Shown here: piece by piece, positions 42,942-63,964 of the stretch
How positions within the stretch are numbered: the stretch's first letter is position 1
How the letters are laid out: every line of letters begins with the position of its first letter
Assembly: GCF_003918875.1 (NCBI RefSeq)
Contig: NW_025765136.1
Coordinates: 124,001-188,000, forward strand
Direction: 5' to 3'
Source: Haliotis rubra
Lineage: Eukaryota
DNA length: 64,000 bases
Program-made: the position numbers and the translations under genes
The notes under the pieces: generated by a model
Told to the model about the DNA's origin: nothing
What the model saw: the letters and a program-made list of their open reading frames with translations, nothing else
The model's database searches: none

Positions 42942-45083
42942 GTGGTTGTTGTGGAAGCACTTGTTATGCAGACAACATGCAAGTATTATACTATGGACTA
43001 GTGGCTGCAGTATGTTTCCATGAGCCAGTCTTGTTGGTGAAAATACCAAATAACAATGTGCGGCCTAGCCAGTTGTACTATTTCTACCTCGACGATTTGA
43101 GTTGTTGCTCTCGATATCAACCGCTGGTTTGACTAGCCTCGATGTTACATATAACTATTTAAAGGGCGTCGTGGATATTTCAAAATACAGTGAGTGCTGC
43201 TGCTAAGCCTCCTCCCCCAAATCCCCCTCCTGATAATCCTGCTCCTCCTAATCCCCCTCCTGATAATCCTGCTCCTCCTAACCATCCTCCTTCTAATCCC
43301 CCTCCTGATAATCCTGCCCCTCCTAACTATCCCCTCCTGATAATCCTGCTCCTCCTAACCATCCTCCTTCTCCTCCTGATAATCCCCTCCTAACTATCCC
43401 TGATAATCCTGCTCCTCCTAACCATCCTTCTGCTAATCCCCTCCTGATAATCATGCTCCTCCTAACTATCCTCCTCCTAATCCCTCTCCTGATAATCCTG
43501 CTCCTCCTAACCATCCTCCTTCTAATCCCCTCCTGATAATCCTGCTCCTCCTAACCATCCTTCTAATCCCCTCCTGATAATCCTGCTCCTCCTAACCATC
43601 CTTCTAATCCCCTCCTGATAATCCTGCTCCTCCTAACCATCCTTCTATCCCCCTCCTGATAATCCTGCTCCTCCTAACTATCCTCCTCCTAATCCCCCTC
43701 CTGATAATCCTGCTCCTCCTAACCATCCTTCTGCTAATCCCCTTCCTGATAATCCTGCTCCTCCTAACCATCCTCCTTTTTATCCCCCTCCTGATAATCC
43801 TGCTCCTCCTAACCATCCTCCTCCTAATCCCCCTCTTGATAATCCTGCTCCTCCTAACCATCCTCCTTCTTATCCCCCTCCTGATAATCCTCCTCCTCCT
43901 AACAATCCTCCTCCTAATCCCCTCCTGATAATCCTGCGCCTCCCAATACCATCCCCCTCCTAATCCCCCGCCTGATAATCCTGCTCCTCCTAACCATCCC
44001 CTCCTGATAATCCAGCTCCTCCTAACCATCCTCCTCCTAATCCCCTCTTGATAATCCTGCTCCACCTAACCATCTTTCTATTCCCCCTCCTGTTAATCCT
44101 GCTTCTCCTAACCATCCCCATCCTCATAATCCTGCCCCTCCTAACATCCTCCTTCTAATCCCCCTCCTGATAATCCTGCTCCTCCTAACCATCTTTCTAA
44201 TCCCCCTCCTGATAATCCTGCTCCACCTAACTATCTTCCTAATCCCCCCTGATAATCCTGCTCCTCCTAACCATCCTCCTCCTCATCCCCCTCCCGATAA
44301 TCCTGCTCCTCCTAACCATACTCCTACTAATCCCCCTTTTGATAATCCTGCTCCACCTAACCATCCTCCTTCTAATCCCCTCCTGATAATCCTGCTCCTC
44401 CCAACCATCTTTCTAATCCCCTCCTGATAATCCTGCTCCCTCCTAACCATCTTTCTAATCCCCTCCTGATAATCCTGCTCCACCTAACTATCTTCCCTAA
44501 TCCCCCTGATAATCCTGCTCCCACCCAACCATCCTCCTCCTCATCCTGATAATCCTGCTCCTCCTAACCATCCTCCTTCTAATCCCCCTCTTGATAATCC
44601 TGCTCCACCTAACCATCCTCCTTCTAATCCCCCTCCTGATAATCCTGCTCCTCCTAACCATCTTTCTAATCCCCCTCCTGATAATCCTGCTCCACCTAAC
44701 CATCCTCCTCCTAATCCCCCTCCTGATAATCCTGCTCCTCCTAACCATCCTCCTCCTAATCCCTCCTGATAATCCTGCTCCACCTAACCATCCTCCTCCT
44801 ATCCCTCCTGATAATCCTGCTCCTCCTAACAATCCTTCTCCTAATCCCCCCTCCTGTTAATCCTGCTCCTCCTAACCATCCTCCTCCTAATCCCTCCTGA
44901 TAATCCTGCTCCACCTAACCATCCCTCCTAATCCCTCCTGATAATCCTGCTCCTCCTAACATCCTCATTTTCATCCCCCTCCTGATAATCTTGCTCCACC
45001 TAACCATCTTTCTAATCCCCCTCCTGATAATCCTGCTCCACCTAACCATCTTCCTCCTCAGTAGGCGCCGTCCCCTAACTAAC
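42942..45083 (+). pseudogene. Third, deleted copy of the CYYR1-like gene: 3' part of the Cys exon, part of intron 2, then an expanded Pro-rich terminal exon
   Basis: 42942-42978 matches exon 2 (GCCGSTCYADN; donor GTAAGT changed to GCAAGT). ~43050-43180 matches intron sequence ~37260-37390. The array ends in 'ggcgccgtcccctaactaa', like the end of exon 4 ('ggcgccttcccctaactaa'). The TM exon is absent. Confidence 0.7.
43195..45060 (+). repeat. ~45-bp tandem repeat encoding PPDNPAPPNHPPSNP-like units
   Basis: Unit cctcctgataatcctgctcctcctaaccatcctccttctaatccc, about 40 copies with length variants. Confidence 0.95.
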
Positions 45084-45535: not shown

Positions 45536-48353
45536 ACCAAGCACGAAAAATCGATCATTGGCACTGAGTCAATAACATCTATCGGCCTACTTTACGAGCA
45601 GCAAATCATTAAAAAAAAGTGCGGAAAATTGTAAACGACAGTTCCCACATTCTGTTTTACGATTTTGAATTTCTTCCATCAGGTCGTCGTCTGCGCATGC
45701 CGATAGCTAGAACAAACATGTTCCCTTACTCTTTTGTACCAGCCGGTATTCATTATTTTAACAATAGTTAATCCTCAATATTTATATTCACCTTATTATC
45801 TTACCATTTCATACCATTTCACACCACTGCCTTATTTTACCTCATCATTTCAGTTCATCATATCCTACTTCTCCCCCGTTTTAGTGCTCTTAACTATTTA
45901 TTTGTTTACCATCTCAGTGCTTACTGAAATGTGATGTGTTGCGATTCCATGTTTTGTTCTGTCTCATGTGTTTTACGATGTAACCACAATTTCCTTCGGG
46001 ATAATAAAGTATTATCTTATCTTAACAAAATATAATAAATGGCGCTTTTTGACGTTTAGTTATAAAATGAGGGACTGCCTTGACAAGTATCCATATGAAA
46101 GATCGCATGTGTACCGAAAGTGTATATGTATATGTACCTAGGCTCTAAACAGTGACGTCGTTATGAATAACACATGCAATGAACAACACGCGGTGAAGTG
46201 GAGCTATAGATAGTCACCTTCACGGCAGCGGATGGAGGAAGAGTGATGTTTCCGTATGTTTCATCATCACTGTTGACGGGTCTAATACAAGGTATTGAAA
46301 TAATTATCTACTACTGACAACTCAAATGCTTAATAGCAGTTTACAGCTTGAAGCTGAACGAGGCGGTGATCGCAGTACTTGGATCGCACATCTCCCTATG
46401 TTTTCTTGACTCGGGGTCGTTTTCATCGTGGGTACTACAGATTTGTATCCCAGGCACATTTCTGGGCCTACCTTTAGAGCACAGCACCACAAACTGAAAA
46501 AATACGTCATAATACCCTTTTACGTATTTTTATGTGATTTTGTTCCAATGCACGTTTGCAGCGCACGCGTTCTCCAAACAATGCCCTATGACGGCGGCAT
46601 AGCAACACTGTCGAGCTAGTGCGTATAAGCTCCGCTCACTGATGTTTCATCTCTACTAGCTATGGCATTTCATAAGCCCAACTATGTTAAGAGTTTCCAG
46701 TAGTTGTTTACCGGCGGATGCGCAACTTTTCGCAAGCACCAGTTTCAAATATGTTTCTTTTATCACTGATACGCTCATATTTATTTGTATTAAGAGCTGC
46801 TGATGTGTTATATATTGTGTATTTTTGTATTTTGTATTTTTTAAAATTAAGTAAAAACCGGTCACATTCTGCCATATTCTATTATTTGCAGTTTGGGTCA
46901 ATTTCATTATTTAAATATATTTTAAGGTTTCAGTGTAACTATTAGGACTAAATGAAATATAAATATGTGAACTGATATATTTTTACATTCAGTAATTTAA
47001 TGCATCATTACACAGAAATGGAGTTTATTAGTATTTTATTTTTTGAAGCAGTAAATGCACAGTAGGCGCCGATCTGATATATTTATAAGTATGACCTATA
47101 TCTTATATCTTATACATATAGGTCATACTTATAAATATATCAGAGTCGGGCGCCTATGAGAATGCATTACACTGGAAATGTCAGTCATTTTCGTGACGGT
47201 TCGGTCAATGTATTCTACTAATTAGGATTATTTCAAGGGGTTAGGGTTAGGGTAAGGGACCTAATCCATTGTACATGTGAGGTGAGGTGAGGTGAAATTG
47301 GGTTTAACGTCGTGCTTGAGAGTATGTCGCTCATATGACGACGTGCATGCGTGTGTATGTGTATGTGCGGCTGCTTGTACTAGCCCAGACTTAAGCTGGT
47401 TTTATAGTGCTAGCCAACTGAGATACCATGCCGCAGTGAAGCATGAATACCCCACTCAGACACATCATACTGACTCTGTGCCGACCAGTTCTTGTTCCCA
47501 TTAATGCCGAGTGCCAGGCAGGGACCAACACTATTGTCTTTTGGTATGACGTAGTCAGGGATCGAACATGTGACCTACCGCTCTCCGGGCGGTGGTCTAA
47601 CCACTACACCAGGGAGGTGGTCCTAGTGACATGTGACCTTTGGCAGAGAACGTCCTCACGTGAAGTTGTGATGCTGATTTCTAAAGGTGCTCCAGATCTT
47701 TTACTGTGGGTTCTGGGATGCAGTTTAAATGGAGAGGTCAGGGGTCATTGGTCGTGAGACTGTATCATATTTTTTGCAATTATTCTTGCCTGTAAAAATT
47801 CCCATCATCATGATCAGGACCTAAATACTGCCGTCTATCCTCATGATCATCATAATCCCACTGACGCTGAATTACTCTATTAGGGATTGTTTTCATCGGG
47901 GGTACTAACAGATTTGTATCCCGGGCACATTTCTGTATCCAGAGATTTGCCATAGCCAAAATCATTATACAGAACAGTATCCATGCAGTACCGTAAATAG
48001 CAATATATGAGTACCACAAAAACAAAGCTGGTTCATGTTTTTCAGATTCATCTGATAACCATGCTAGATAATGCTCTGAATATAAGTGAACGAGTTGCAT
48101 GCTGTTTTTAGCCATATTCCAGCAATATCATGGCGGGGAACACTAGAAATGGGCTTCAAACATTGTACTTATGTGTGGAATCAAACCCAGTTCTTCAGAG
48201 TGACGAGTGAACACTTAAACCGCTACCCCACCACCGAAGACTAATATAGGAGCTAGGAATATAGGAGTACTGTTTGTGATATTGTCACTTTGTATCTTCG
48301 TGTTTTAAATAATTTGCTAAATGATTAGTGTTAAGATCCTGTCAGTGACAACA

Positions 48354-49032
48354 TATATACCATTAAAAAAATTAGGGGATATTCCATTTTGCTAGCATAC
48401 CACTAGCCAATGCCAATGCATATGAGAAAAAGTAATATATATCCATACAGATGAAGCATTTCCAAAGGAATGGAATAAATTGTCACATTTTCCTTAATTT
48501 CTCTTCATCATCTGTTTCCTCCTTGGCTTCATCATTTGCATTTTATCAATCTTGTAAATCCAGTTTCCCCTACTTTTTTGAATGGTATATAACGTTACTG
48601 TAGAAGGCTGTGGGATAACATTTGGTTTTATGTAGCCTGGAGCATTATGCAGCGGCGGCATAGCAAGACAGCGGGCGCGCTAAAGTGAGATTATTGCTCT
48701 GCGACAGGCAGGCAACGCTGCCTGGGGCTGTGCTCGGTGAATTGCACGTTTTTAGAGGTAAACAGACACACAGACAGACAGACAGACAGATATTTTGTTA
48801 AAGTATCACCTCGTATATTTACATGTGTACATGGAATGGCTGTTGACAGCCTGGAGGATTATAAAGAAAATATACCATTCAAAAGTAGGGGATATTCCAT
48901 TTCCAAAGGAATGGAATAAATTGTCACATTTTCCTTAATTTCTCTTCATCATCTGTTTCCTCCTTGGCTTCATCATTTGCATTTTATCAGTCTTGTAAAT
49001 CCAATATCCCCTACTTTTTTTGAATGGTATAT
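48354..49032. mobile_element. Two adjacent copies of a small TIR element (~48354-48590 and ~48870-49032)
   Basis: Each copy is bounded by atataccatt.aaaa..taggggatatt and its reverse complement; they share a ~130-bp near-identical segment. Confidence 0.6.
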
Positions 49033-49109
49033 CTTGATGTGAGATTTGTCATTACAGACCCCACTATACCTAACTATCTTATTGTTTGCACAATGCAGTT
49101 TACCAAGTA

Positions 49110-49608
49110 CAGTGAAACACTGTCTAAACCGGCACCCCATAGGACCAAAATAAAATGCCAGTTTAGGCAGCGGTGCCGGATTAGACAGTGACGATAATTT
49201 TCGAACATGGCTGCCAATTACACTCTGTAATCTCTTTATTTCTGATTATCTAGCCTGCCAGGAGGAGTGTATTGGATTAAGGGACCTTGATTGGACTGCT
49301 CATACCCATGCCGGCTTTGAGCGTTTGATTCACTGCGTAATCACTACTTCGATTTCCTGATTGTCTTGCGTGACAAGAGGATTAATTAGTGTATTGGATT
49401 ATGAGTCCTTGATTGGACTGCTCATACCCATTCCGGTTTAGACAGTGTTAATTACAGTTCAAATTGCTTGTTGTGACCGGAAAGTCGTGCCGGAATACGG
49501 AATGTTTTAATGATCATAATATCGTTGTAAAATGGCGGGACCAAAATCTTATGCCGGTTTTGACAGTGTGCCGGATTAGACAGGTGCCGGTGTTGGCAGG
49601 TTTTACTG
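49110..49608. mobile_element. pogo/Tigger-type MITE ending 35 bp upstream of the LARS ATG
   Basis: TA|cagtgaaacactgtctaaaccggcacc ... ggtgccggtgttggcaggttttactg|TA, with internal 'ccgg.ttagacagtg' subterminal repeats. Confidence 0.8.
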
Positions 49609-49642
49609 TATAATCAAAGCAGTGAACCTATTTCAACTCAAC

Positions 49643-52600
49643 ATGGAGAGAAAAAGTACCGCCAAATTGTCGGAACTACAGCAGATAGAGAAAGGAGTGC
49701 AAGCAAGATGGGAAAAGTTGAAAATCTTTGAAGAAGATGCTCCTCCAAGTGGGTCAGCAGAGGCAAAGTGAGTTTAAAGCTGGGTCTTAAAATATATTTT
49801 AACAACCTGTAGTGCTTTTACAAGAACTGAGGATATAAGGGTGTATATAAGGGTGTTTGTCATCATGGGTGACACGTAAGAAATGGTCAGGCTCGTAGAC
49901 TTGGTTGATGCCAGTCAACATATCCCATTTGCACAGAATGATGCTGATATTTCTCATGATGTCATTCGCTGGAATGTCTGGCATTTCAAGAGATCACGAA
50001 TAATGAAATAGTTTCTTGAAGGAATAGGGTTTAATTCACTGTAGGGCTGGGACGGGTCCAAATTTTCTACCTGGGTACCCCACCCCTATTACCCTACCCT
50101 ACCCGGATACCCATTATTGTAAATTCCTGACATCAAATTTGGAAGAAATGGCATATATTCTTCAGCTCAGAGGCTAAAATTCTGACTTTTTCAATATCTT
50201 AATCATGTATTATATTCAAAACAGGTGACTGTAAATTATGTCTAAATCTTCAAAGACAATACAACTTTTAAATCATGAAAGAATAACATATTACATTGTT
50301 TAATCTATTAGTCACATGATCATAACGAGTCCGGGTATTGAGACGGGTACCTGGGTCCAACTCATTACCCACCCGTCTCGGGTATCTGTGTTTCCCATCC
50401 CAGTCCTAATTCACTGAATATACAAGTAAATCAAAACAGCCCTGCAATTGAGTGGGGCTTTTGCACAACAATCATACAACATTGATGAAACAAACAATAC
50501 AATCTGATAATGTTTTGTTTATATAGACTAACATAGCATGTATAATAAATCTGTTTCAGACAAGAGAAGTACTTGGCGACATTCCCCTTTCCATACATGA
50601 ATGGCCGTCTTCACCTTGGCCACACGTTCTCGCTGTCCAAATGTGAGGTGGGATATATATCTGGTCATACTTTAAACCCTTCTTTATATTAGCATGTAGA
50701 GCTTACAATAGCTGTATGAATTAGTGCCTGTTTAGAATCGTACTTCTTTTAAGTGGTGCCTAAACAATAGCGATTTGAATCTATGATAATTGTTAAACAA
50801 CTTTTATCCAAAGTTGAATAAAATTCTGAGATTTAGATGTTCAACTGGCAAGATAAAATTATGACAATTCGCAATCTTAATTACACTTTATTCGATTTAC
50901 TTTTTTGTTTAAAGTGAAATTCATTGGTACGTTTTCACTACAAACAGACTATACATATAGAATTGAAAAGTTTCACCTTCAATATTTTTTTAATGCATGA
51001 TATTTGTGACACCACTTGCATGTTTCAGTTTGCTGTGGGGTACCAGAGGATGCTTGGGAAGAAGTGCCTGTTTCCATTTGGTTTCCACTGTACTGGCGTG
51101 CCAATCAAGGTGAGTAGCAAAGAAGAAGGAACATCGAATCTGTTGCCACTAAAGTGTTTCAGGGGTGGAAATAACCCATTGCCCGACGTCCGAGTCCAGT
51201 GTCTTTTTCTGTCGGGCAAGCAAATTTGTATATCACACTGTACCGGTGTCCAGTTGACTTTCCAATGTTTATTATGTTGTTTATTTAAAAAATCAGCAAG
51301 AAAACGGTTGGTAAAGTGGGAAAATTATCAGGGCAAGTGACTTTACATGTGCCACTGTACCTGGAGTACACTAGCAATTTTAAAGTTATTTCCACCCCTG
51401 TGTTTACAGATATGTTAGTAATAGAATCTTCAAGGGGCCAGTGTTATATGATATACCTGTCGTAAGAAGTACTTCGTCAGAAACTAACATTATAAATTTG
51501 GACTTGTATTGATAGAGGTCTGGTTTAGTAAGGTTCTGTTTTGGGGAGATGTCACTATACATGATTTGTGAGGTGATAGCAGGTGCCCATGTTTACCAGG
51601 CATGTGCAGATAAGCTGAAGCGGGAGATGGAAGACTATGGATTCCCCTCCTCCAGGTTTCCCCTCGAGACCACGGAGGAGGAGGTGGCGCCCACAGAAAA
51701 GGATGTCGTGATCAAGGACCAGGCTGTGGGCGAGAAGGTGAGGCTACTCTTGTAATATTTTACAGTATAAATTTTTCTGCAAGCTGATTGGCTGGGGTTG
51801 GACACGTTGAAAATAGTTTATCTGAGTGTTAGGCTATTGTATGAAGTAATTTGTGTTGATTAGTGAAAGTAAACATGAGCACGAGTTGTAATCTCCCCAA
51901 GGAGTTGAGATTGAAAATACGATGTGCTGTTGAGATTGACATCCAGTGATCGAGGGAACAGACAAAGCCCTTTGAGCATGCATGTAGATGGGATGGACTA
52001 TAGTGCTATATAAATACCCATATAATAATAATAATAATAATAATAAATGCTAAAAATGTCTTCATGCAGAATGTTTACCAGTTTGTAAGTACAGACTGTT
52101 GTGTTAAAGTTAAGTAACCTACACTTAAGTATCTCAGAGGTTTGACACAAGGGCAAAATGATGAACAGATAACGAGCTCCCAGTTTGTTTTCTTTCAACA
52201 CGTTCAAGATAACTGTAAGTTTGACTGTAGCATATTTGTGTTTGTATATCTGAGAGGGCTCTGATCTGATGATTATTTTTAGACCGCCGCTGCTGAGTGC
52301 GGCGTAAAACTAAACTCACTCACTCACTCTGATAATATCGTACATGATCATGTGTTCCTTTCAGAGTGAAGTGTTGGCGGAAACTGGTGGTCTTGAATAT
52401 CAGTGGCAGATCATGGCTGCCCTAGGACTGACCAATGATGAGATCAAATCCTTTGCTGACCCTGTACACTGGCTGAAGTACTTCTCCTCTCACTGCAAGA
52501 GTGACCTCATCAGATTGGGAGTCAGGGTAGGTGATTACTGGTGGGGGTGACAGTGTGTTGGGTTGGGAGTCAAGGAAGGTGATTACTGGATGGGGTGACA

Positions 52601-55600
52601 GTATGTTGGGGTGGGAATCAGGGTAGGTGATTACTGGTGGGGGTGACAGTGTGTTGGGATGGGAGTCAGGGTAGGTGATTACTGCTGGGGGTGAGAGTAT
52701 GTTGAGGTGGGAGTCAGGGTAGATGATTACTGTTGGGGTTGACAGTGTGTTGGGGTGGGATTAGGGGTAGGTGAATACTGCTGGGGGTGACAGTATGTTG
52801 AGGTGGGAGTCAGGGTAGATGATTACTGTTGGGGTTGACAGTGTTTTGGGGTAGGGGTAGGTGAATACTGCTGGGGGTGACAGTATGTTGGGGTGGGAGT
52901 CAGGGTAGATGATTACTGTTGGGGTTGACAGTGTGTTTGGGTGGGAGTCAGGGTAGATGATTACTGCTGGGGGTGACAGTGTGTTGAGGTGGAAGTCAGG
53001 GTTAAAGGTCACATGCAACATAAAACACAACTTTGCAGATTCTGATACCTTTCGGTATGGACTAACGACACAAAGTGTCAAAAATGCAAATTCAACTTAC
53101 AAAGTTGAAAAATAACGCAATGAAAAAAACCGCGCGAAAACGTTTCACTAATTTTCCCCAGACTTTTCTGGGGAATACGGGTTTCAACAGCTGGGCTGCG
53201 CTCATAGCACGTGCGCAGTGAAATAGGTTCGCGCAACTTGGAAGCGGGCTGTCTGGTGAATACCGGTGAAGGCTTTGGTGTGAGCTATTTTCATAATGTT
53301 TTGTTGATATCTCACAGGCACGAGCTTTTTGTATGTTATGACAGTAAATAAACTGTTTATATAATTTCATTTGTCTATTTCACCACACATTCTTCTTACC
53401 GAGTCACTTTCTCAGTTCGATACTTAAAAGCAATGTCATTATTTAGAGTTGACACAATTTCTAACTGTGATATAGATATGTCGCTGTCACAGACAAAACT
53501 CAATGTCTTGTTTTATTGACACCTGTGTGTCTGCCTGACTGTCTGCTAATGACAATATTCAATACACAACTGCGATCACTGACCACATGCAATTTGAACT
53601 TAACACCAATCAGGCTATACACCATAAACAAAACGCATTGATTTATGGCCCGAGTTCGGTCTCTGTCACATTATGTAATTACACAGACAGGCAGGTGTGA
53701 TACTTGAACACATGACATGTTATGATATCTGTTGATTGCAAAATGTTATACACAAGAAATGAGCATGTATTTACAAAACCCAACTTTCTATGTATACACA
53801 CACAATGAGCCGTGAAGGCGGCATCTGCTAATGAACCAGCCGTTACACTTGAGTGCACACCCACCCGCTCTGACTGGGTTCGGTATCCCGGCTGCTTCGT
53901 TTCGAGGGAGGTAAACCCAAGTACAAAATATTGCACTTTTGATTTGCGATTATACGCTTATAATTTTGTTTATTTGTTTTTTCATAATCAGCAATGCATA
54001 TTATATGTCATGAAGAAGTGATAATTGTGTTTTATTTATGTTTGATTTTTTGGTTGCATGTGACCTTTAATGATTTCTGTTGGGGTGACAGTGTGTTGGG
54101 GTGGGAGTAGGGGTAGGTGAATACTGCTGGGGTTGACAGTATGTTGGGGTGGGAGTCAGGGTAGATGATTACTGCTGGGGGTGACAGTGTTTTGGGATGG
54201 GAATCAAGGTAGATGATTACTCCAGGGGGTGACAGTGTCTTAGGATGGGAATCAAGGCAGATGATTAATGCTGGGGGTGACAGTATGTTGGGGTGGGAGT
54301 CGGGGTAGGTGATTACTGCTGGGGTTGACAGTGTCTTAGGATGGGAATCAAGGCAGATGATTACTGCTGGGGGTGACAGTATGTTGGGGTGGGAGTCAGG
54401 GTAGGTGATTGCTGCTGGGGGTGACAGTATGTTGAGGTGGGAGTCAGGGTAGGTGATTACTGCTGGGGGTGACAGTGTGTTAGGATGGGAATCAGGGTAG
54501 GTGATTACTGTTGGGGGTGACAGTATGTTGGGGTGGGAGTCAGGGTAGGTGATTACCGCTGGGGGTGACAGTGTGTTAGGATGGGAGTCAGGGTAGGTGA
54601 TTACTGCTGGGGGTGACAGTATGTTGGGGTGGGAGTCAGGGTAGATGATTACTGCTGGGGGTGACAGTATGTTGGGATGGGAGTCAGGGTAGGTGATTAC
54701 TGCTGGGGTGACAGTATGTTGGGATGGGAGTCAAGGTAGATGATTACTGCTGGGGGGGATGACAGTATGTTGGGGTGGGAGTCAGGGTAGGTGATTACTG
54801 CTGGGGGTGACAGTGTGTTGGGATGGGAGTCAGGGTAGATGATTACTGCTGGGGGTGACAGTATGTTGGGGTGGGAGTCAGGGTAGGTGATTACTGCTGG
54901 GGGTGACAGTGTGTTAGGGATAGGGAACTGCTGGGGGGTCAGGGTAGGTGATTACTGCTGGGAGTGACAGTATGTTGGGGTGGGAGTCAGGGTAGATGAT
55001 TACTGTTGGGGGTGACAGTATGTTGGGATGGGAGTCAGGGTAGGTGATTACTGCTGGGGGTGACAGTGTGTTAGGATGGGAGTCAAGGTAGATGATTACT
55101 GTTGGGGTGACAGTATGTTGGGGTGGGAGTCATGGTAGGTGATTACTGCTGGGGGTGACAGTGTGTTGGGGTGGGAGTCAGGGTAGATGATTTCTGCTGG
55201 GGGTGACAGTGTGTTGGTGTGTTGTGGGAGTCAGGGTAGATGATTACTGCTGGGGGTGACAGTGTGTTGGGGTGGAAGTCAGGGTTAATGATTTCTGTTG
55301 GGGTGACAGTGTGTTGGGGTGGGAGTAGGGGTAGATGAATACTGCTGGGGGTGACAGTATGTTGGGGTGGGAGTCAGGGTAGGTGATTACTGCTGGGGGT
55401 GACAGTATGTTGAGGTGGGAGTGATGGTAGGTGATTACTGGTGGGGGTGACAGTGTGTTGAGGTGGGAGTAGGGGTATTTGATTACTGCTGAGGGTGGCA
55501 GTGTGTTGAGGTGGGAGTAGGGGTATTTGATTACTGCTGGAGGTGGCAGTGTGTTAGGATGGGAATCTTTAACTGAGAGTGTTATCTCAAATCTTGCTTC

Positions 55601-58600
55601 AACCTGGATTATGTTTCTTCATTTATCTTATACCATATGTATGCTCATGAGATAGATATCTCAAATCTTGCTTCAGACTTTATGTTTCTTCATTTGTCTC
55701 TTACAGTATGTGATGCTCTGAAATTCTGCAAAGAGGCATAGAGGCCAAATGAGTTACTCCCTCACTTACAAACTCTCTGATTGGCTGCTGCAGGTTGACT
55801 GGAGGAGGAGCTTCATGACTACTGATTACAACCAGTACTTTGATTCCTTCGTCCGCTGGATGTGTATCAGGCTGAAGGAACGGGGCAAGTGCAAGTTTGG
55901 GAAAAGGTGGGAGATGTGATTGGACTGTGAATACAAATGGAGGGTGGTGGGGTAGCCTAGTGGTTGAGGCCTCGCTCATCGCAACGAAGACCCGGGTTCG
56001 ATTCCCCAAGTTGGAACAATGTGTGAAGCCCATTTCTGGTGTCCAATTCTCAAGATATTGCTGGAATATTGCTAAAAGCGGCATAAAACTAAACTCGGTC
56101 ACATTCATAAGGACACAGGATTTTGGAATCCTTCATTTTGCTATATATATATACAAAAAATGAGCTTGTCAGTTGGGGCGCTAAACTGGTATCAGATAGG
56201 ATGTTATTGTATGTTACACCAATGCTTGTACGGGTTATAAACAAAAATTTAGATCCAGGCCAGGAGTGATCTTTAGCAGCGTATGTTTTCGTAAGCGGTG
56301 ACTTACGAGATCGGGTAGGGAAGCCTAATACTGATTAGGTTAGTGTTGCGGCCTTGGATTTACCCTCTATGTCAATGAGAATAAAGGCTGCGGGTGTGAG
56401 GTCACTCGTTTATTTTGAGGATTTAGTGGATAGCAGTAGATATCAGTTGATATCAGTAGACGCTCCTGTGGGTGACACGGAAGTGTTGCTACCGGCGGTC
56501 AACCCTCCGCAAACTACAGGATTGTAATACCTTAGAAGTAGCTTATCATGTACTATGTTGATTTGCTGTCACATCAAGTGATCACATGTGCTGAGCTCAT
56601 AAGGTGACGGTGACAAGTGCTGTGTAAGTGAAAAATGGCTGATGACCTATGATTTGAAACAAGCCAATCCCAATGAACCAGGTGATCATTACAAATCACA
56701 TCACTGACAGTAAGATAGAATAACCTAATTGCCCTATGACCTTGTAATGGAATGATCCAAAACAATCAGAGACCTGCATTAAGCACTTAAAATACTACTT
56801 GCCGACAACTGCTTATTGTGAACACACTGAACCTCTGTTGAACCCAAAACAACACAGATGTATATACATTTTGATAAAAGATACGCAACACATGAAGTTA
56901 ATATAAATGCTTTTATTTCACCCTATGCATGTCATCGTATGCTTGAAATGTCCATCACTGGATTGTCAGGTCCAGACTCAATAATTTACAGACCATGATC
57001 AGAGCTGGATTATTGTTGAGTGTTGCATTAACAATTAATTGTAATGCGTATGAAAGGCTTTTCTTAGACTGAATAATGTCCTTTATACATGTGTACAGAC
57101 GTTGATGTTCTAAATGTACGTCAGGTACGTTTTGTTACAGGTACACCATCTTCTCCCCTAAAGACAACCAGCCCTGTATGGATCATGACCGTAGTTCAGG
57201 GGAGGTAAGTGGGGCTTATAATCCAGTACCACATTCCAGCTTAGAGGTGAGGTGAGGTGAAATTGGGTTTAACGTCGTGCTTGAGAATATTTCTCTCATA
57301 TGACGACGTGCATGCGTGTGTATGTGTATGTGCGGCTGCTTGTACTAGCCCAGACTTAAGCTGGTTTTATAGTGCTAGCCCACTGAGATACCATGCCGCA
57401 GTGAAGCATGAATACCCCAACAAGTACCATAATTTAACGTCTTTTGGTATGACGTGGTCAGGGATTGAACCCGCGACCTTCCGCTCTCTGGGTGGATGCT
57501 CTAACCACTACACCACGGAGGCGGTCCTCCAGCTTACAGATGACTTAGCATGTCATCACCTCCAAATGCTGACTTGCTTATCATTTGTTAACAAAAGCCT
57601 ATATTCTGATACTCGTGATGATCCGGGTTAGAATTGGATGGGTGGTCAGGCTTGGTTGACACATGTCATTGTATTCTAATTGTATAGATTGATGCTCATG
57701 CAGTTGATCAGTGTCTTGTCCAGACTCGATAATTACATTCTGTCGTTATATAGCTGGAATACTGCTGTGTGTGACGTGAGACAACAAACCAACCAAGCCA
57801 TATTCTGAAATCAGATGAGTCTGACCTAATGCAAGGTTTTCGGTGCACTCTTCATATTGTTTTGCGCAGTATATATATATGTTACTACAACTTGGGCTGA
57901 CTATCGATATTGATCATAGAGACAGATAATCATTAACTAAATATTGATCGATTGTCGATAAATATCAGAGACATAACTTTGAACAAAAATGTCTGACAAA
58001 TGAATATACTTCACATCATTGGCAAGTGGTGACATGTTTTTGTATAGATTATAAACAAAACAGAATACTGAACATAATTTAGAAGCAGACCATAAATAAA
58101 GTCCTAAACCTTTTTCTATCACAAAAGTTCATGTACGATATTATCGATAACACAATTTTCATGTCAATAATCATTTATAATCTTTACTATTGACGATATT
58201 TTCAATTATTGATAATTTTAGCCAGCCCTAACTGTAACAGTGAGTGAATAGTAACAGCCCTAATGGTGATTATTATTTTTTATTTTATTCATAAGATCAC
58301 TGCAATATTTCAGGGTGTGGCACCTCAAGAGTACACACTGATTAAGATGAAACTCACTGAACCTCTGCCTCAGAAACTCAGGTGAGTGTTTTGTTACCAT
58401 GGTTACAAAATTTCAGTGTAAGTTTTGTTATGTTATTCAAGCTCTCATTGTTATCAGTGTGTGAAATATTCTCAAAATATTGATGGACAGGTGGGCAAAC
58501 TGAACTTAAAACTTTCTGGTCATCTTCCAATTTCATTATCTTAATTTATGTGTAACAGTTATTTTTTTCCGAAATTCATTTATGGGAAGGTTTGATAGAT

Positions 58601-61600
58601 TATATTTCTTATATTTTTGGTAGTTGCATTGATCTTTAGAAATGGGAGAATCTTTTCTGTTCTGATCAAATGAGTGCATAAAAAATAACATGAAATCTCA
58701 GTATCAACTCTGGCTTGTCAGGGCTCCAGCTAATTATTTTGACTCAGTCATATTTACAAATATAATGAAATTATTTATTGACTGGTCAAGTATTATCGGG
58801 ATGAGTTTTAAAACTGACATATTCATGTGAGCACTGTTTGGGGACTGGTCTTTTATTATAGGGTGGCTGTCCTGAAAAATGGTTACATGGGAGATGATGA
58901 AAGTCATGAAAACATACTACAGAAAATGGTGTTGGGGTGTTAGCTAAGTATGATACAGCACTAAGACCAATGACATCGCACACACAGCTCACCACAAAGC
59001 CCGCACACACACTCACCACCCACACTCACACACAATGCCCACGCCCCATGCCAACATGCACACCCACCCCACACCACTGCACGACACCCACACACCTTAA
59101 TAAATGACCAGTTCCTTGACTTTACTATTCAAGTCATTTGGTGTGAAGGGAAAAATAGCCATGAAAAGAGTTGGCAAGGAGGTAACTTTGACCTCCCAAA
59201 TGATCATGCCCTTTGGGTTTGTCATATTCATTTTATTTCAGCCAATATATATGCTTCGTTTCTTTCATTCCACAGTTCTCTGACGGGTCGTCCGGTGTTC
59301 CTGGTTCCTGCAACTCTGCGCCCAGAGACCATGTTTGGACAGACAAACTGTTGGTTGCATCCGGACATGAAGTATGTGGCCATAGAGATTGTGACTGGAG
59401 AGGTGTTTGTGTGCACACGCAGAGCAGCACGGAACATGAGCTACCAGGGATTCACAGCGGTCAATGGAGAGTACAAGGTCCTGGTGGAACTCGTGGGACA
59501 GGTACGGCATGTTGATACAGGTAGAGACAGGTAGATAGGTTGCCGGACTCAGAGACTTGGTTCATGTCTGCATACTCTTGGGGGGGTGGGGTAGTCTAGA
59601 GGTTAAAGCACTGGCTCGTCACGCCATGTGTGAAGCCCTTTTCTGGTGTCCCCCGCCATGATATTGCTGAAATATTGCTAAAAGCATTGTAAAACCACAC
59701 TCACTCAAGGATAGTAACTGTAAATATGAATCATTTGATTGTCTGGTCCAAGCACAAATATAAATACAGGTCATCATGATGTAGCTCAGGGTTCGCACGG
59801 GCTTGAAAACGCCTGAAATTTGGACATTTAACCCCGAAAGGCCATACATTTATTTTAGCTTTCAAAAGGCCCTAAATGCCAGTGATTTGCCCTAAAATGG
59901 TCCCATATTTAGCAAAACTTGTCAAGTTAGGATTTTACAGAAAACTAATACATAATAAATTGTAGCTTGCAATGACAATGGGCGTTAATTAATCTCCATT
60001 GCCCCTTTATACTTTCGGCCAGATTTTCAAATTTAAAGTGTTGATTAGGCCTTGAAAACAGCCTAAAAACTTGTTAAATTTGATGGCTGACAATCTGTCA
60101 AACCCTGTTGCTGGAATACAGCTGAGAGACACATCATCGACAGGTAGTCAAATGTATTGTCCACTGAGCTACCTGGTGTGATCCTTCATCTGCCAGAACC
60201 CATCTGTACTAGAGTGAGTGAGTGAGTATTGTTTTACACCGCTTTTAGCAACACTCCAGCAATATCATGACGGGGGACACCAGAAATGGGCTTCACACCT
60301 TGTACCCATTTGGGGAATCGAACCCAGGTCTTCGGCGCGACGAGCGAACACTTTACTCACCAGGCTACCCAACCGCCCCCAATTTGTACCAGAGCCTTTT
60401 ACCTAAGTGATTACTGTCTACATCCTGGGTCACTCTGTGGACACCCCAGTTGTGTAAACTCCAACAGAAGGATAACTGCAACACAAAAAGTAATATTCAG
60501 ACCATATTGTGCACGCTTTATTTGGTGAGTGCACAGGCGCGTAGCAAGCCATTTTTTTGTGTGTAAGCCCGATAGAGCAAGGTAAAGCAGTATTTCTGGT
60601 GCCATTTCTATCAGCATAATTTCTGGTTAATTTTCAGGACGTGATGGGTCATGCCCTGTCAGCGCCTCTGTCAGCGTACAAGACAATCTACACCCTGCCA
60701 ATGCTGACCATCAAAGATGATAAAGGTAGGAAGATACTGTCAATGAAGTGGCCCTCCACTATTGTTCATACACAACGAATTTCAACTCATACAGTCAGTA
60801 CATGGCCAATTTCATACATTTTAACTTACAATGCAACACAGCTGTATTAATATATACACAGTACTACACAGAGCTACACAGTACTACACACAGCTACACA
60901 GTACTACACAGCTACACAGTACTACACAGCTACACAGTACTACACAGAGCTACACAGCACAACACAGTACTACAGAGCTACACAGTACTACACAGAGCTA
61001 CACAGTGCTACACAGTACTACACAGAGCTACACAGAGCTACACAGTACTACACAGAGCTACACAGTACTACACAGAGCTACACAGTACTACATTTCTGAG
61101 GGTGTCCCCACAGTACTACACAGAGCTGCTACACACTACAGTAATCACAGAGCTACAAAGTACTACACAGTACTACACAGAGCTCTTAGTACTACACAGA
61201 GCTACATTGCTACACAGTACTACACAGAGCTACTCAGTACTACACAGTACTACACATTGCTACACAGTACTACACAGAGCTCTTAGTACTACACAGTACT
61301 ACACATTGCTACACATTGTACTACACAGTACTACGCACATTGCTGAACAGTACTACACACTACACAGTGCTACACAGTACTACACATACACAGTGCTACA
61401 CACACAAAGTGCTACACACACTAAGTACTACACAGAGCTACACAGTACTACACATTGCTGAACAGTACTACACAGAGCTCACAGTACTACACAGTACTAC
61501 ACATTTGCTACACAGTACTACACACACAGTGCTACACAGTACTACAGTACTACACATTGCTGCACAGCTACTACAGTGCTACACATTGCTACACAGTACT

Positions 61601-63964
61601 ACATTGCTACACACACAGTGCTACTATGGTACTACACATTGCTACAAAGTGCTACACAAAGCTCTACAAATTGCTACACAGAGCTACACATTGCTACACA
61701 GTACTACACATTGCTGAACAGTACTACACATTGCTCAACAGTACTACAGTACTACACACAGTACTACACAGTACTACATTGCTACACAGTACTACACACA
61801 GAGCTGCAAAGTGCTACACAGTCCTAAAAGTATTACACATACAGAGCTCACAGTACTACACATTGCTGCACAGTACTAAACAGAGCCTATAGTACTACAC
61901 AGTACTACACATTACTACACAGTCCTATAGTACTACACAGAGCTGCAAAGTGCTACACAGTCCTAAAGTATTACACAGAGCTGCAAAGTGCTACACAGTC
62001 CTAAAGTATTACACAGAGCTACAAAGTGGTACACAGAGCTACAAAATACTACAGAGAGCTACAAAGTGCTACACAGAGCTACAAATATGCTATAGAGCTA
62101 CAAGGTACTACACACAGCTACAAAGTGCTACACAGAGCTACAAATATGCTTTAGAGCTACAAGGTACTACACAGAGCTACAAAGTGCTACACAGAGCTAC
62201 AAATATGCTATAGAGCTACAAGGTACTACACACAGCTACAAAGTGCTACACAGAGCTACAAAATACTACATAGTGCCTTAGTGTCTCTACTTTTACAGAC
62301 AGGGAAGAAGTTCTATCACTGTGTTGAACTGTGTAACATCAGATTAGTATAACAATTACATTTATCCTAAAATCCTTGTTTTTGTTCAAATTGTCCACTT
62401 ATTTCAGTATGAGCCTATAAGCTGATGTTTTATGATACTCAGTTATCGTGTGTATGTGATTCAGGGACAGGTATTGTGGCTAGTGTTCCCTCAGATTCGC
62501 CTGATGACATCGCAGCTCTCCGAGATCTCAAGAAGAAAGAAGTTAGTATACTTTTTAATTACAAAAAATATATTGCGTTTTTAAACTTATCCTATCTCAC
62601 GGTATGCACTTCTCTCTCTTCCTTCGACCATGGCGTGGAAACGTGCTGTAGGCTAAGTTGAATCAAATCTTCTGGACTCTCTCCCAACTGTTCGCTGCCC
62701 CCGGTACCACCCACTCCACTTGTGCTGTGTAAGCCAAGGGGTTTATAAATCAGAAGCAACTTATCACAAGTATTGGAGTTTAGCAAATTGGGAGTTAGTG
62801 CTTTCTCCTGGCCTCCTTGTGTGTAGGGACCACCCACTCCTAGAGTTTTTGTGCTGTGTAAGCCAAGGGGTTAAAATCAGAAGCAATCCTATCACAAGTA
62901 TTGCGACCTCACGGTTGTAGAGTTGACACAGGGTAATCTGCGGCCCACCAGCCAACCGTGGGATAATGCATACCATGAGATAGGATAAGTTTAAAAAATT
63001 GGAAATTTTAACTATAATTTGTATATTTATATACTTATCCTATGGATGCCCACCCAACCTTCCCCACATCACAGATTACTGGGGGCTCCAAGTCGAAAAT
63101 GACCATCTGAGCGCAAAGCACGTTTCACAGAGATGATTGACAGGTCCAGTGGGGGGAGCCATCGGGTGGGAGAGAGGCCAGAAGATTTGATTCAGCTTAG
63201 CCTACAGAACGTTTCCACACCGTGGTCGAAGTAAGAGAGAGAAGTGCATACCATGAGGTAGAATAAGTATATAAATATACAATTTATAGTTAAAATCTGC
63301 AAAATGTGAGCCAGGAGTGATACCAAATTGAGAATTTTTGAAAACACAGCAAGTCTATCTGTGAACTGAACCCTGTCAGCACAGATGAAACGCTGGTTTG
63401 CCTGGTTAAACATTTGTATATTTACACAATGTTGTGATATGCCTCACAGTGCAGTGTAAGTTATGAACACTCTGAAAATACTTCTTTCGTCATTCGATGT
63501 TTGATACAGGAAAAGTATCAGGATTAGGTGTCTGACTTTGTGTGCTGGCGATTAGGTCCCTGACTCTGAGGGTGTGTTTGTTCAAATCCTTGATGGGACT
63601 CAACCCTCCAAAAAGAACTAGAATTTGTACTTTACTAAGAAAGTGTAATCCCAAATGTTACATGAAAAGTGGCCAGTGATCACTATGCTGAGCTTTGTTG
63701 CTACCTGTAAGTATTAATTTCAGATTAAATATTATGGCTGGTATGCTTCATATGCAAATTATTAGAATGGGTCCTAGCCAGTTAGATTCGAAAATCTGCA
63801 GGAGTTACGATAACTTTGTGACAAGTGTGACAAATTCATGATTAGAGATTGATGTTTGTGTTAATGTCTTTACTGTGTTTGCTGTGATTATTATGTTTAC
63901 TTTGTTCCAGCCTTTCAGGCAAAAGTATGGCATCAAGGATCACATGGTGTTGCCCTTTGAACCC
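49643..63964 (+). CDS. LARS1: Leucyl-tRNA synthetase, cytoplasmic type (N-terminal 428 codons; gene continues beyond the window); sequence-divergent copy
   Basis: Manual splicing with GT-AG sites and matching phases. Exons: 49643-49767, 50560-50647, 51029-51109, 51600-51737, 52365-52526, 55794-55906, 57141-57204, 58314-58381, 59276-59501, 60638-60725, 62465-62541, 63911-63964 (1284 nt, no stops). Translation MERKSTAK...[14 protein letters not shown] (HIGH motif)...[17 protein letters not shown]...VDWRRSF...[12 protein letters not shown]...[15 protein letters not shown]...[15 protein letters not shown] (CP1 editing domain)...[13 protein letters not shown] is colinear with human LARS1 as recalled. 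Confidence 0.96.
50042..50408. mobile_element. hAT-type MITE with a perfect 8-bp TSD
   Basis: attcactg|tagggctgggacggg ... cccatcccagtccta|attcactg. Confidence 0.85.
51160..51400. mobile_element. hAT-like MITE
   Basis: 16-bp TIR caggggtggaaataac / gttatttccacccctg; no clean 8-bp TSD. Confidence 0.6.
52513..55568 (+). repeat. 48-bp G-rich minisatellite (~41 units) in LARS intron 5, split by the Kolobok-like MITE
   Basis: Unit gggagtcagggtaggtgattactgctgggggtgacagtatgttggggt; the first unit overlaps the exon 5 end and donor. Confidence 0.95.
53006..54066. mobile_element. Non-autonomous Kolobok-like DNA transposon with TTAA target-site duplication
   Basis: TTAA|aggtcacatgcaac ... gttgcatgtgacct|TTAA. 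An empty-site unit of the same minisatellite (gtcagggTTAAtgatttctg) lies at 55278-55297. Confidence 0.85.
57892..58230. mobile_element. hAT-like MITE
   Basis: Ends ttgggctg / cagcccta with a degenerate 8-bp TSD actacaac / actgtaac. Confidence 0.55.
59787..60107. mobile_element. hAT-like MITE
   Basis: Ends cagggtt / aaccctg, with subterminal 'cttgaaaa..gcct' motifs near both ends. Confidence 0.5.
60212..60380 (-). mobile_element. tRNA-derived SINE family 1, full-length copy in a LARS intron
   Basis: Reverse complement of the 1786-1960 consensus. Confidence 0.85.
60855..62270 (+). repeat. ~10-bp satellite (tacacagtac / tacacagagc variants) in LARS intron 10
   Basis: Visible tandem array of ~1.4 kb, with variant units drifting to tacaaagtgc toward the 3' end. 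Confidence 0.95.
62578..63296. mobile_element. Non-autonomous DIRS-like (tyrosine-recombinase retrotransposon) mini-element
   Basis: ~100-bp inverted terminal repeats (62585-62687 versus 63165-63268), plus an internal region 62967-63043 complementary to both the left terminus and the right terminal extension. Confidence 0.65.

What the first reader, a model, noticed from the sequence alone, without database searches (positions are those of the whole stretch)
51717..52397. Coordinated charge reversal of the conserved basic segment of LeuRS: candidate neofunctionalised aminoacyl-tRNA synthetase paralog
Seen: the exon 4/5 junction encodes [21 protein letters not shown]. Established (from recall): human LARS1 has [21 protein letters not shown] here, and yeast has a similar Lys-rich KKSKAAAK stretch. 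Six of seven lysines are lost, four of them to Glu, so the segment changes from about +6 to about -4. All 12 exons nevertheless stay in frame with perfect splice sites. Inference: four K-to-E changes in 18 residues are hard to explain as drift or sequencing error. They suggest a second, repurposed LeuRS that has lost or inverted a nucleic-acid or partner-binding surface, for example a tRNA-independent or signalling copy. I know of no such cytoplasmic LeuRS paralog described in molluscs.
Basis: partly seen in the sequence, partly recalled or inferred. Interest (0 to 1): 0.85.

Follow-up and report, generated by a model that had tools for sequence, protein, structure and literature searches.

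The report
Charge-reversed duplicate LeuRS gene in abalone
Blacklip abalone carries a second, intact copy of the essential leucyl-tRNA synthetase gene in which five otherwise almost invariant lysines of a flexible arm beside the active site have become acidic or neutral, a natural experiment on an arm whose job is still unknown.

Summary
The window is Haliotis rubra contig QXJH01001219.1. Its + strand from 49643 holds the first 12 of 30 exons of an annotated LARS1-like gene, "copy A" (XP_046556656). The exon 4/5 junction encodes KDQAVGEK|[15 protein letters not shown] second gene, "copy B" (XP_046556271), sits on another contig and keeps the canonical KDKAVGKKSKVLAKTGGLKYQW. Copy B also keeps the ancestral neighbouring gene.

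A and B are not alleles. Their introns are about 80% identical and dS is 0.18. The duplication probably followed the split from H. asinina.

Copy A has been under purifying selection (omega 0.28, intact 30-exon ORF). It has also gained 58 lineage-specific replacements against 16 in B. Exons 4-5 are the hot spot, with omega 1.8.

In the 22-residue motif only lysines changed, five of seven (p = 0.0008). Among 220 full-length LARS1 proteins the motif charge is +5 to +8 in 218. Copy A is -3.

The segment lies in the disordered LSD1 insertion, whose function is unknown.

No copy-A transcript was seen. The RNA-like contigs examined are B-type. Repurposing is therefore inferred, not shown. The scan had not noted this on other DNA.

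The parts
46024..49642 (+). 5' flank of copy A. It holds about 1.5 kb inherited from the ancestral LARS1 upstream region, now split by three insertions (46386-47987, 48358-49028, 49117-49608). The duplication breakpoint lies just short of the neighbouring CS-domain gene's first exon.
   Evidence: blastn of copy B upstream against the window. CS-domain exons are absent from the 49.6 kb upstream of copy A.
49643..49767 (+). Exon 1 (start codon at 49643)
50560..50647 (+). Exon 2. The HIGH motif (HLGH) is intact. A-specific changes M47L and V48A.
51029..51109 (+). Exon 3. A-specific M95V in the otherwise invariant HCTGMPIK.
51600..51737 (+). Exon 4: start of the LSD1 insertion. Carries the inserted Ser115 plus P116S, K117R, P120L, A130T, K139Q and K143E.
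51714..51737 (+). First half of the charge-reversed motif (residues 137-144, KDQAVGEK)
52365..52406 (+). Second half of the motif (residues 145-158, [14 protein letters not shown])
52365..52526 (+). Exon 5. Carries K146E, K150E, K155E, L159Q, A173S, P185S and P186S.
52516..55564 (+). Intron-5 minisatellite, two arrays of a 48-bp unit that repeats the exon-5 end plus its splice donor
55794..55906 (+). Exon 6
57141..57204 (+). Exon 7
58314..58381 (+). Exon 8
59276..59501 (+). Exon 9 (CP1 editing domain; the T-rich TLRPET motif is intact)
60638..60725 (+). Exon 10
62465..62541 (+). Exon 11 (GTG loop and Asp399 equivalent intact; A-specific T390A)
63911..63964 (+). Exon 12. The gene continues beyond the window for 18 more exons.

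Best explanation
The window carries the 5' third of 'copy A'. This is a DNA-level, intron-containing duplicate of the cytoplasmic leucyl-tRNA synthetase gene (LARS1) of Haliotis rubra, moved away from the ancestral locus. The canonical 'copy B' stays beside the ancestral neighbour. Those points are shown. It is also shown that copy A has been kept intact by purifying selection for most of its history, and that it evolved about 3.6 times faster than B at replacement sites. The changes concentrate in the LSD1 module (exons 4-5). In the conserved KxKxxGKKSKxxAKxGGxKYQW arm only the lysines were replaced, five of seven, four of them by Glu. The rest is inferred. In ordinary eukaryotic LeuRS this disordered polycationic arm sits about 6 A from the KMSKS loop, and it most likely helps capture a polyanionic partner, above all the tRNA acceptor end. 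Turning it anionic should weaken or re-time tRNA engagement. The same copy also has KMSKS changed to KMSKG, plus A706V, E592G and M95V. Leucine and ATP binding and the RagD-binding and UNE-L domains are left in place. Copy A would then be a specialised LeuRS, either a low-tRNA-affinity form or a signalling/regulatory form, working beside the housekeeping copy B.
For: Identity: the window is 100% identical to H. rubra GCA_003918875.1 contig QXJH01001219.1. Its 30-exon CDS translates exactly to P0382.
Second gene: P0383 on contig QXJH01000981.1 has the same 30-exon structure.
Not alleles: introns align at about 80% identity and dS(A,B) is 0.176, uniform along the gene. The CS-domain neighbour is present next to B, H. 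asinina and H. rufescens but absent from the 49.6 kb upstream of A.
Timing: ((A,B),asinina,rufescens) is the best ML tree, RELL 0.90.
Selection: the A branch has Nd 58 and Sd 55, omega 0.28, a deficit of replacements versus neutrality with p = 2e-10. About 10 stop codons would be expected under neutrality and none is observed.
Acceleration: 58 versus 16 replacements, chi2 23.8, p = 1e-6. Synonymous counts are 55 versus 39, not significant.
Hot spot: exons 4-5 have Nd 13 and Sd 2, omega 1.84, against 0.22 for the rest (Fisher p = 0.004). The same region in B has omega 0.04.
Lysine targeting: the 5 changed residues in the 22-residue motif are all among its 7 Lys, p = 0.0008.
Uniqueness: motif charge is -3, against +5 to +8 in 218 of 220 LARS1 proteins.
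Catalytic and domain integrity: HLGH, TLRPET, GTG, the Asp399 equivalent and the leucine-pocket residues Leu594 and Ser597 are intact. The Pfam domains tRNA-synt_1, Anticodon_1, RBD_LARS1 and ULD_3 all score above cut-off.
Structure context: residues 122-152 have pLDDT below 50 in the AF2 model. In human LARS1 the equivalent insertion (Arg106-Ser154) is disordered, is called conserved in all eukaryotic LRSs, lies 6 A from the KMSKS loop and has unknown function (PMC7229842).
Precedent: in bacterial LeuRS a single LSD lysine is critical for tRNA binding (PMC3643597).
Against: No transcript of copy A was seen. In two RNA-like runs the contigs over exons 2 and 5 are B-type, and there is essentially no depth over the variable part of exon 4.
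A fragment search for spliced exon-4/5 peptides found no Haliotis sequence.
The omega of 1.84 in exons 4-5 is not significantly above 1 (p = 0.34), so positive selection is not formally shown.
The role of the lysine arm in tRNA binding is an inference; its function is unknown in the literature searched.
At 52395 all contigs laid from an independent DNA run read A (Lys). E155 may therefore be polymorphic, or those contigs may all be copy B.
A duplication before the asinina split is not rejected (AU p = 0.097).
The inherited promoter region is broken by three insertions.
Confidence: 0.55

Rival explanations
1. Copy A is an ordinary, fully active housekeeping LeuRS duplicate, retained for dosage or for tissue- or stage-specific expression. 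On this view the lysine arm is dispensable, and its loss is a tolerated or compensated change with no new function.
For: All catalytic and editing motifs and all domains are present. Overall omega is 0.28. Some LARS1 proteins lack much of the arm, for example P0084 and P0097. The arm has no known function. A duplicated vertebrate ThrRS (TARSL2) keeps its canonical activities (abstract of PMC10200997).
Against: If the arm were simply unconstrained, changes should fall on any of its 22 residues and should include K-to-R. Instead only lysines changed, to E or Q (p = 0.0008). The same copy also changed 13 further positions that are at least 90% conserved, including the last residue of KMSKS.
Confidence: 0.2
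2. Copy A is a duplicate on its way to becoming a pseudogene. It was constrained for a while, is now silenced or decaying, and the odd substitutions reflect relaxed selection.
For: The replacement rate is 3.6-fold that of B, with hits at invariant sites. There are insertions in the inherited promoter region. A 3.5-kb internal tandem duplication repeats exon 24.
Against: The 3531-nt ORF is intact and all 29 introns have canonical splice sites, despite about 8-11% synonymous divergence on the A branch. About 10 stops are expected under neutrality, and fewer than 0.1% of simulations stay intact. Replacements are strongly depleted relative to neutrality (p = 2e-10). Within the motif the non-lysine residues are perfectly conserved.
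Confidence: 0.2
3. Artefact: the two 'genes' are uncollapsed haplotypes, a contaminating or hybrid genome, or sequencing errors.
For: The assembly is contig-level and the two copies lie on separate contigs. Read-level support for the exon-5 letters is incomplete.
Against: dS is 0.18, and intron identity of about 80% with many indels is far beyond allelic variation. The upstream neighbour differs between the copies. An independent DNA run holds A-type intron contigs at 97-98% identity as well as B-type contigs. Differences are spread over all 30 exons and are mostly substitutions.
Confidence: 0.03

Closest known systems
Canonical cytoplasmic LeuRS / LARS1 (human structures 6LPF, 6KQY; H. rubra copy B XP_046556271)
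   Same: The 30-exon gene structure matches copy B. Copy A is 93% identical in protein to copy B and about 60% to human. It has the HIGH motif, the CP1 editing motifs, the anticodon-binding, RagD-binding and UNE-L/ULD domains, and a disordered LSD1 insertion at the same place.
   Different: The LSD1 arm has charge -3 instead of +5 to +8. KMSKS is KMSKG. There are thirteen extra deviations at columns that are at least 90% conserved. The gene sits at a non-ancestral locus.
Human LARS splice variant LSV3 (exon-20 skipping; PMC8941210)
   Same: It is a LARS-derived protein that coexists with the full enzyme and separates functions. LSV3 is catalytically dead yet still senses leucine for mTORC1 and binds RagD. 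That is the kind of split proposed here.
   Different: LSV3 arises by splicing and deletes 71 residues of the catalytic core. Copy A arises by gene duplication and keeps the core, changing a surface arm by point substitutions. No activity data exist for copy A.
TARSL2, the duplicated cytoplasmic ThrRS of vertebrates (PMC10200997)
   Same: A lineage-specific duplicate of a cytoplasmic aminoacyl-tRNA synthetase kept alongside the housekeeping gene (abstract seen).
   Different: According to that abstract TARSL2 retains canonical aminoacylation and editing. No inversion of a conserved motif is reported for it.
Leucine-specific domain (LSD) of bacterial LeuRS (PMC3643597)
   Same: An inserted module next to the KMSKS loop in which a lysine (E. 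coli K598) is critical for tRNA binding and couples to aminoacylation and editing. This is the functional analogy used for the mechanism.
   Different: The bacterial LSD is a folded module at a different insertion point. Eukaryotic LSD1 carries a disordered low-complexity arm of unknown function.
Two cytoplasmic LeuRSs of Natrialba magadii (PMC4005665)
   Same: Two LeuRS genes in one compartment of one organism (abstract).
   Different: An archaeon with enzymes of mixed bacterial and archaeal domain types. It is unrelated to the LSD1 arm.

Membership tests
Eukaryotic cytoplasmic LeuRS (LARS1, class Ia) | HIGH signature in the Rossmann fold | tested here: met
   HLGH is present at residues 60-63, identical to human and to copy B.
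Eukaryotic cytoplasmic LeuRS (LARS1, class Ia) | KMSKS signature | tested here: inconclusive
   Copy A reads KMSKG. Both lysines are kept and the last Ser is Gly. Gly occurs at this column in none of 113 representatives, which have S, N or Q.
Eukaryotic cytoplasmic LeuRS (LARS1, class Ia) | CP1 editing domain with T-rich motif, GTG loop and conserved Asp | tested here: met
   TLRPET, KGTG and SDSPDD are present. The only change is T390A next to the GTG loop.
Eukaryotic cytoplasmic LeuRS (LARS1, class Ia) | Anticodon-binding, RagD-binding and UNE-L/ubiquitin-like C-terminal domains | tested here: met
   Pfam Anticodon_1 scores 62 bits, RBD_LARS1 96 bits and ULD_3 126 bits, all above cut-off.
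Eukaryotic cytoplasmic LeuRS (LARS1, class Ia) | Lys-rich low-complexity arm in LSD1 (KxKxKGKKSKxxAK...KYQW), described as conserved in all eukaryotic LRSs | tested here: not met
   Only 2 of the 7 K/R positions are kept and the net charge is -3. Of 220 proteins, 199 keep all seven and 218 have charge +5 to +8 (PMC7229842).
Eukaryotic cytoplasmic LeuRS (LARS1, class Ia) | Leucylation of tRNA-Leu | not testable with these tools
   This needs enzyme assays.
Functionally diverged aaRS paralog (neo- or subfunctionalised duplicate) | A canonical copy coexists in the same genome and the two are not alleles | tested here: met
   
Functionally diverged aaRS paralog (neo- or subfunctionalised duplicate) | The paralog is kept by purifying selection yet shows asymmetric, localised acceleration | tested here: met
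   Omega is 0.28 for A against 0.11 for B. Replacements are 58 against 16. Exons 4-5 have omega 1.84 against 0.22 for the rest.
Functionally diverged aaRS paralog (neo- or subfunctionalised duplicate) | The paralog is expressed | tested here: inconclusive
   Only B-type contigs appeared in two small RNA-like runs. No Haliotis fragment was found in the protein collection.
Functionally diverged aaRS paralog (neo- or subfunctionalised duplicate) | A changed biochemical function | not testable with these tools
   This rests on inference only.
Processed pseudogene / retrocopy | Loss of introns, a poly-A remnant, disabling mutations | tested here: not met
   All 29 introns are present at the same positions as in copy B, and the ORF is intact.

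The most novel reading that the evidence does not exclude
Copy A is a naturally evolved separation-of-function LeuRS. Its anionic arm repels tRNA, so the protein acts mainly as a leucine-binding signalling or regulatory subunit (RagD/mTORC1 or multi-synthetase-complex scaffold) rather than as a charging enzyme. If so, it would reveal that the universally conserved, function-unknown lysine arm of eukaryotic LeuRS is its tRNA-capturing tether.
Probability: 0.2. Interest if true: 0.8.

Novelty: new variant of a known kind. Interest (0 to 1): 0.58.

Why it matters
The Lys-rich disordered insertion of LSD1 is conserved from fungi-like lineages to humans. The human LARS1 structure paper states explicitly that its function is unclear (PMC7229842).

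Here nature supplies a matched pair in one genome. One copy has the canonical arm. The other is 93% identical, and in its arm only the lysines were replaced. Comparing the two proteins for tRNA binding, charging kinetics, localisation, RagD binding and complex assembly would test the arm's function directly. The same five substitutions could also be transplanted into human or yeast LeuRS.

The case adds a rare example of a long-lived duplicate of a cytoplasmic aminoacyl-tRNA synthetase in an animal. It shows clear asymmetric evolution.

Tried and rejected
1. Alleles or haplotigs: rejected. dS is 0.18, introns are about 80% identical and the upstream neighbour differs.
2. Retrocopy: rejected, because all introns are kept.
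3. Gene-conversion mosaic explaining mixed phylogenetic signal: dS(A,B) is uniform at 0.15-0.19 in six windows, so no mosaic was seen.
4. The acidic segment as a mollusc or gastropod trait: rejected. Lymnaea, Aplysia, Biomphalaria, Littorina, Babylonia, Gigantopelta, the bivalves and three other Haliotis species all keep the lysines.
5. A hidden alternative exon in intron 4 encoding the basic segment: not pursued. Exons 4 and 5 already align gap-free with human and with copy B.
6. Expression evidence: the single reads call showed only B-type transcripts. A search with the spliced exon-4/5 peptide for short database fragments found nothing from Haliotis. The first representative search returned mostly fragments.
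7. A bootstrap tree run timed out. It was replaced by site-pattern counts and a topology test.
8. Global charge compensation: net charge is +5 for A, +11 for B, +1 for asinina and +7 for rufescens, so there is no conserved total and the idea was dropped.
9. Literature: no paper on a Haliotis LARS paralog or on the function of the LSD1 arm was found in the held library.
Full report
**The observation**

The + strand at 51600-51737 (exon 4) and 52365-52526 (exon 5) encodes ...[13 protein letters not shown]|[22 protein letters not shown]... Both exons are phase 0 with AG/GT borders. HMMER against PDB chains aligns these exons without gaps to human LARS1 residues 99-144 and 147-197. This confirms the human sequence [22 protein letters not shown] at 137-158.

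**What the gene is**

Twelve GT-AG exons in the window give a 428-residue N-terminal LeuRS part with an intact HLGH motif. The closest proteins are from abalone. The window part matches Haliotis rubra XP_046556656/7 (P0382, 1177 aa) at every residue except where I had misplaced the exon-12 donor. The window is 100% identical to H. rubra assembly GCA_003918875.1 contig QXJH01001219.1. I rebuilt the full gene. It has 30 exons, all junctions are canonical, and the CDS translates exactly to P0382. Pfam finds every LARS1 domain above cut-off.

**A second, canonical gene**

The same 90% cluster holds a second H. rubra protein, XP_046556271 (P0383, "copy B"), on contig QXJH01000981.1. Copy B has the same 30-exon structure. 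It reads KDKAVGKKSKVLAKTGGLKYQW, as do H. asinina, H. rufescens and H. cracherodii.

- In B, H. asinina and H. rufescens a 154-residue CS-domain gene lies head-to-head just upstream. Its exons are not found in the 49.6 kb upstream of copy A.
- Homology between A and B starts about 1.5 kb upstream of the start codon of B. It ends about 100-160 bp after the stop codon.
- B is therefore the parental copy in place, and A is a gene-sized DNA duplicate inserted elsewhere.

**Not alleles, and when the duplication happened**

- Introns of A and B align colinearly over 14.6 kb at 80% identity.
- dS(A,B) is 0.176, and 0.15-0.19 in every sixth of the gene.
- dS(B,asinina) is 0.27 and dS(A,asinina) is 0.31.
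- Informative sites favour (A,B) by 32, against 20 and 6 for the alternatives.
- The ML topology test favours ((A,B),asinina,rufescens) with RELL 0.90. It does not reject a duplication before the asinina split (AU p = 0.097).
- No A-like protein from H. asinina, H. rufescens or H. cracherodii appeared among the hits.

**Selection**

I used a parsimony ancestor of A and B with two outgroups.

| Measure | Copy A branch | Copy B branch |
|---|---|---|
| Replacements (Nd) | 58 | 16 |
| Synonymous changes (Sd) | 55 | 39 |
| omega | 0.28 | 0.11 |

- The relative-rate test on replacements gives chi2 23.8, p = 1e-6. Synonymous rates do not differ significantly.
- Copy A is nevertheless constrained. 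Replacements are far fewer than neutral expectation (p = 2e-10). At its synonymous divergence about 10 premature stops would be expected, and fewer than 0.1% of simulated neutral copies stay open.
- Exons 4-5 (residues 99-199, the LSD1 module) are the hot spot. The A branch has Nd 13 and Sd 2 there, omega 1.84, against 0.22 for the rest (Fisher p = 0.004). The same region has omega 0.04 in B.
- An omega above 1 is not itself significant in exons 4-5 (p = 0.34).

**The motif**

- In the 22 residues 137-158 the only A-specific changes are K139Q, K143E, K146E, K150E and K155E. All fifteen non-lysine residues are untouched.
- The chance that five hits all fall on the seven lysines is 0.0008.
- These are the only K-to-E changes in the whole protein on this branch.
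- The five positions are K in 90-100% of 113 non-redundant LARS1 representatives.
- Of 220 full-length proteins, 199 keep K/R at all seven positions and 218 have motif charge +5 to +8. Copy A is -3.

**Other changes in copy A**

A-specific replacements also hit other highly conserved columns:

- M95V in HCTGMPIK
- P116S, P185S and P186S
- T390A beside the GTG loop
- E592G, two residues from the leucine-pocket residue Leu594
- I599V and A706V
- the last residue of KMSKS changed to Gly
- D833N

These come; the pocket residues are from PMC7229842. At 394 columns that are at least 90% conserved, copy A deviates 29 times. Copy B deviates 19 times, four of them from a probable annotation choice. The single-copy abalone genes deviate 13-16 times. 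Part of what looks odd is therefore genus-wide.

**Structural context**

[quoted passage not shown] It is invisible in the crystal beyond its first 13 residues, lies 6 A from the KMSKS loop, and has unclear function (PMC7229842).
- An AlphaFold2 model of copy A (mean pLDDT 79.5) has pLDDT below 50 for residues 122-152. Order resumes near residue 156.
- In bacterial LeuRS a different leucine-specific module positions the KMSKS loop and binds tRNA through a critical lysine (PMC3643597).
- I found no later paper that assigns a function to the eukaryotic arm.

**Expression**

- Two small RNA-like runs of a coded organism gave contigs that end at the exon-5 borders. They differ from the window at 12 and 14 positions.
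- Copy B differs from the window at exactly 14 positions there, including 52395 G>A. At exon 2, copy B differs at 11 of the 12 positions listed for the reads. These transcripts therefore come from copy B.
- Depth over the variable part of exon 4 is near zero in both runs. This is a weak negative.
- An independent DNA run holds A-type intron pieces at 97-98% identity and B-type pieces as well.
- RefSeq lists two isoforms for copy A. From my own knowledge of that pipeline this usually needs transcript support, but I could not check it.

**Verdict**

This is a second LeuRS gene with a directed loss of the basic arm. What the copy does remains inference.

My best reading (0.55) is a specialised LeuRS. 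It would have weakened or re-timed tRNA engagement and retained leucine and partner binding. The rivals are:

- an ordinary duplicate with a dispensable arm (0.2)
- a recently silenced copy (0.2)
- an artefact (0.03)

The gene is annotated in RefSeq only as "cytoplasmic-like". I found nothing in the held literature on it.

Noticed in passing
window 52516-53002 and 54070-55564 (intron 5); L006 16059-17490; L007 15384-16563; L001 14104-14391: The 48-bp minisatellite that repeats the exon-5 end plus its splice donor is not peculiar to copy A. Donor-like 21-mers occur 31 times in A's intron 5, 18 times in H. asinina and 9 times in H. rufescens (both single-copy, essential genes). Copy B has none beyond the real donor, and its intron 5 is only 288 bp. 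The repeat is therefore ancestral and evidently tolerated.
   Followed up: partly
L002 58398-61900 versus 61978-65482 (outside the window, downstream in the same gene): A 3.5-kb tandem duplication at 99.7% identity repeats the 3' part of exon 23 and all of exon 24 with its splice sites. It is either an assembly artefact or a very recent event. It could add an in-frame 47-residue repeat if both copies of exon 24 were spliced in.
   Followed up: partly
window 46386-47987, 48358-49028, 49117-49608: Three insertions split the roughly 1.5 kb of upstream sequence that copy A inherited from the ancestral LARS1/CS-gene intergenic region. One lies only about 35 bp before the start codon. This could change the expression of copy A.
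   Followed up: partly
whole CDS of copy A (window exons plus L002/L003): On the A branch, A>G changes on the sense strand outnumber T>C by 26 to 9. On the B branch the counts are 5 and 6. Most of the A>G changes are replacements (K>E, M>V, I>V, E>G, D>G). The cause is unknown: selection, transcription-linked asymmetry or something else.
   Followed up: no
all Haliotis LARS1 (P0282, P0286, P0383, P0384, P0382): The genus as a whole deviates at 13-16 of 394 columns that are at least 90% conserved in other animals. Examples in human numbering are K141V, Q221M, F222C/Y, G260A, C573F and M739T. Human deviates at 2 of these columns and Lymnaea at 4.
   Followed up: partly
L001 29780-29880 and 30741-30800 (copy B exons 14/15): Copy B's annotated exon 14/15 borders (101 + 60 nt) differ from the 78 + 86 nt used in A, asinina and rufescens. 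This creates eight apparent B-specific residue differences at 502-511. It is probably an annotation choice, and I left it out of the rate counts.
   Followed up: partly
copy A residues 1151-1174 (outside the window): Six A-specific replacements cluster in the last 27 residues of the UNE-L/ubiquitin-like domain. In human LARS1 this domain binds IARS1 in the multi-synthetase complex (PMC13439101). The columns are poorly conserved in general.
   Followed up: no
window 43195-45058 and 60855-62276: There are two further satellite arrays. One is a C/T-rich array of 15/45-bp units upstream of the gene with very strong GC skew. The other is a 10/20-bp TACACAGTGC array in intron 10.
   Followed up: no
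window 51693 and 52395: An independent DNA run reads G at 51693. That gives Ala130, the ancestral state, where the window has Thr. All contigs laid at 52395 read A (Lys155). This could be polymorphism in copy A, or contigs of copy B only.
   Followed up: partly
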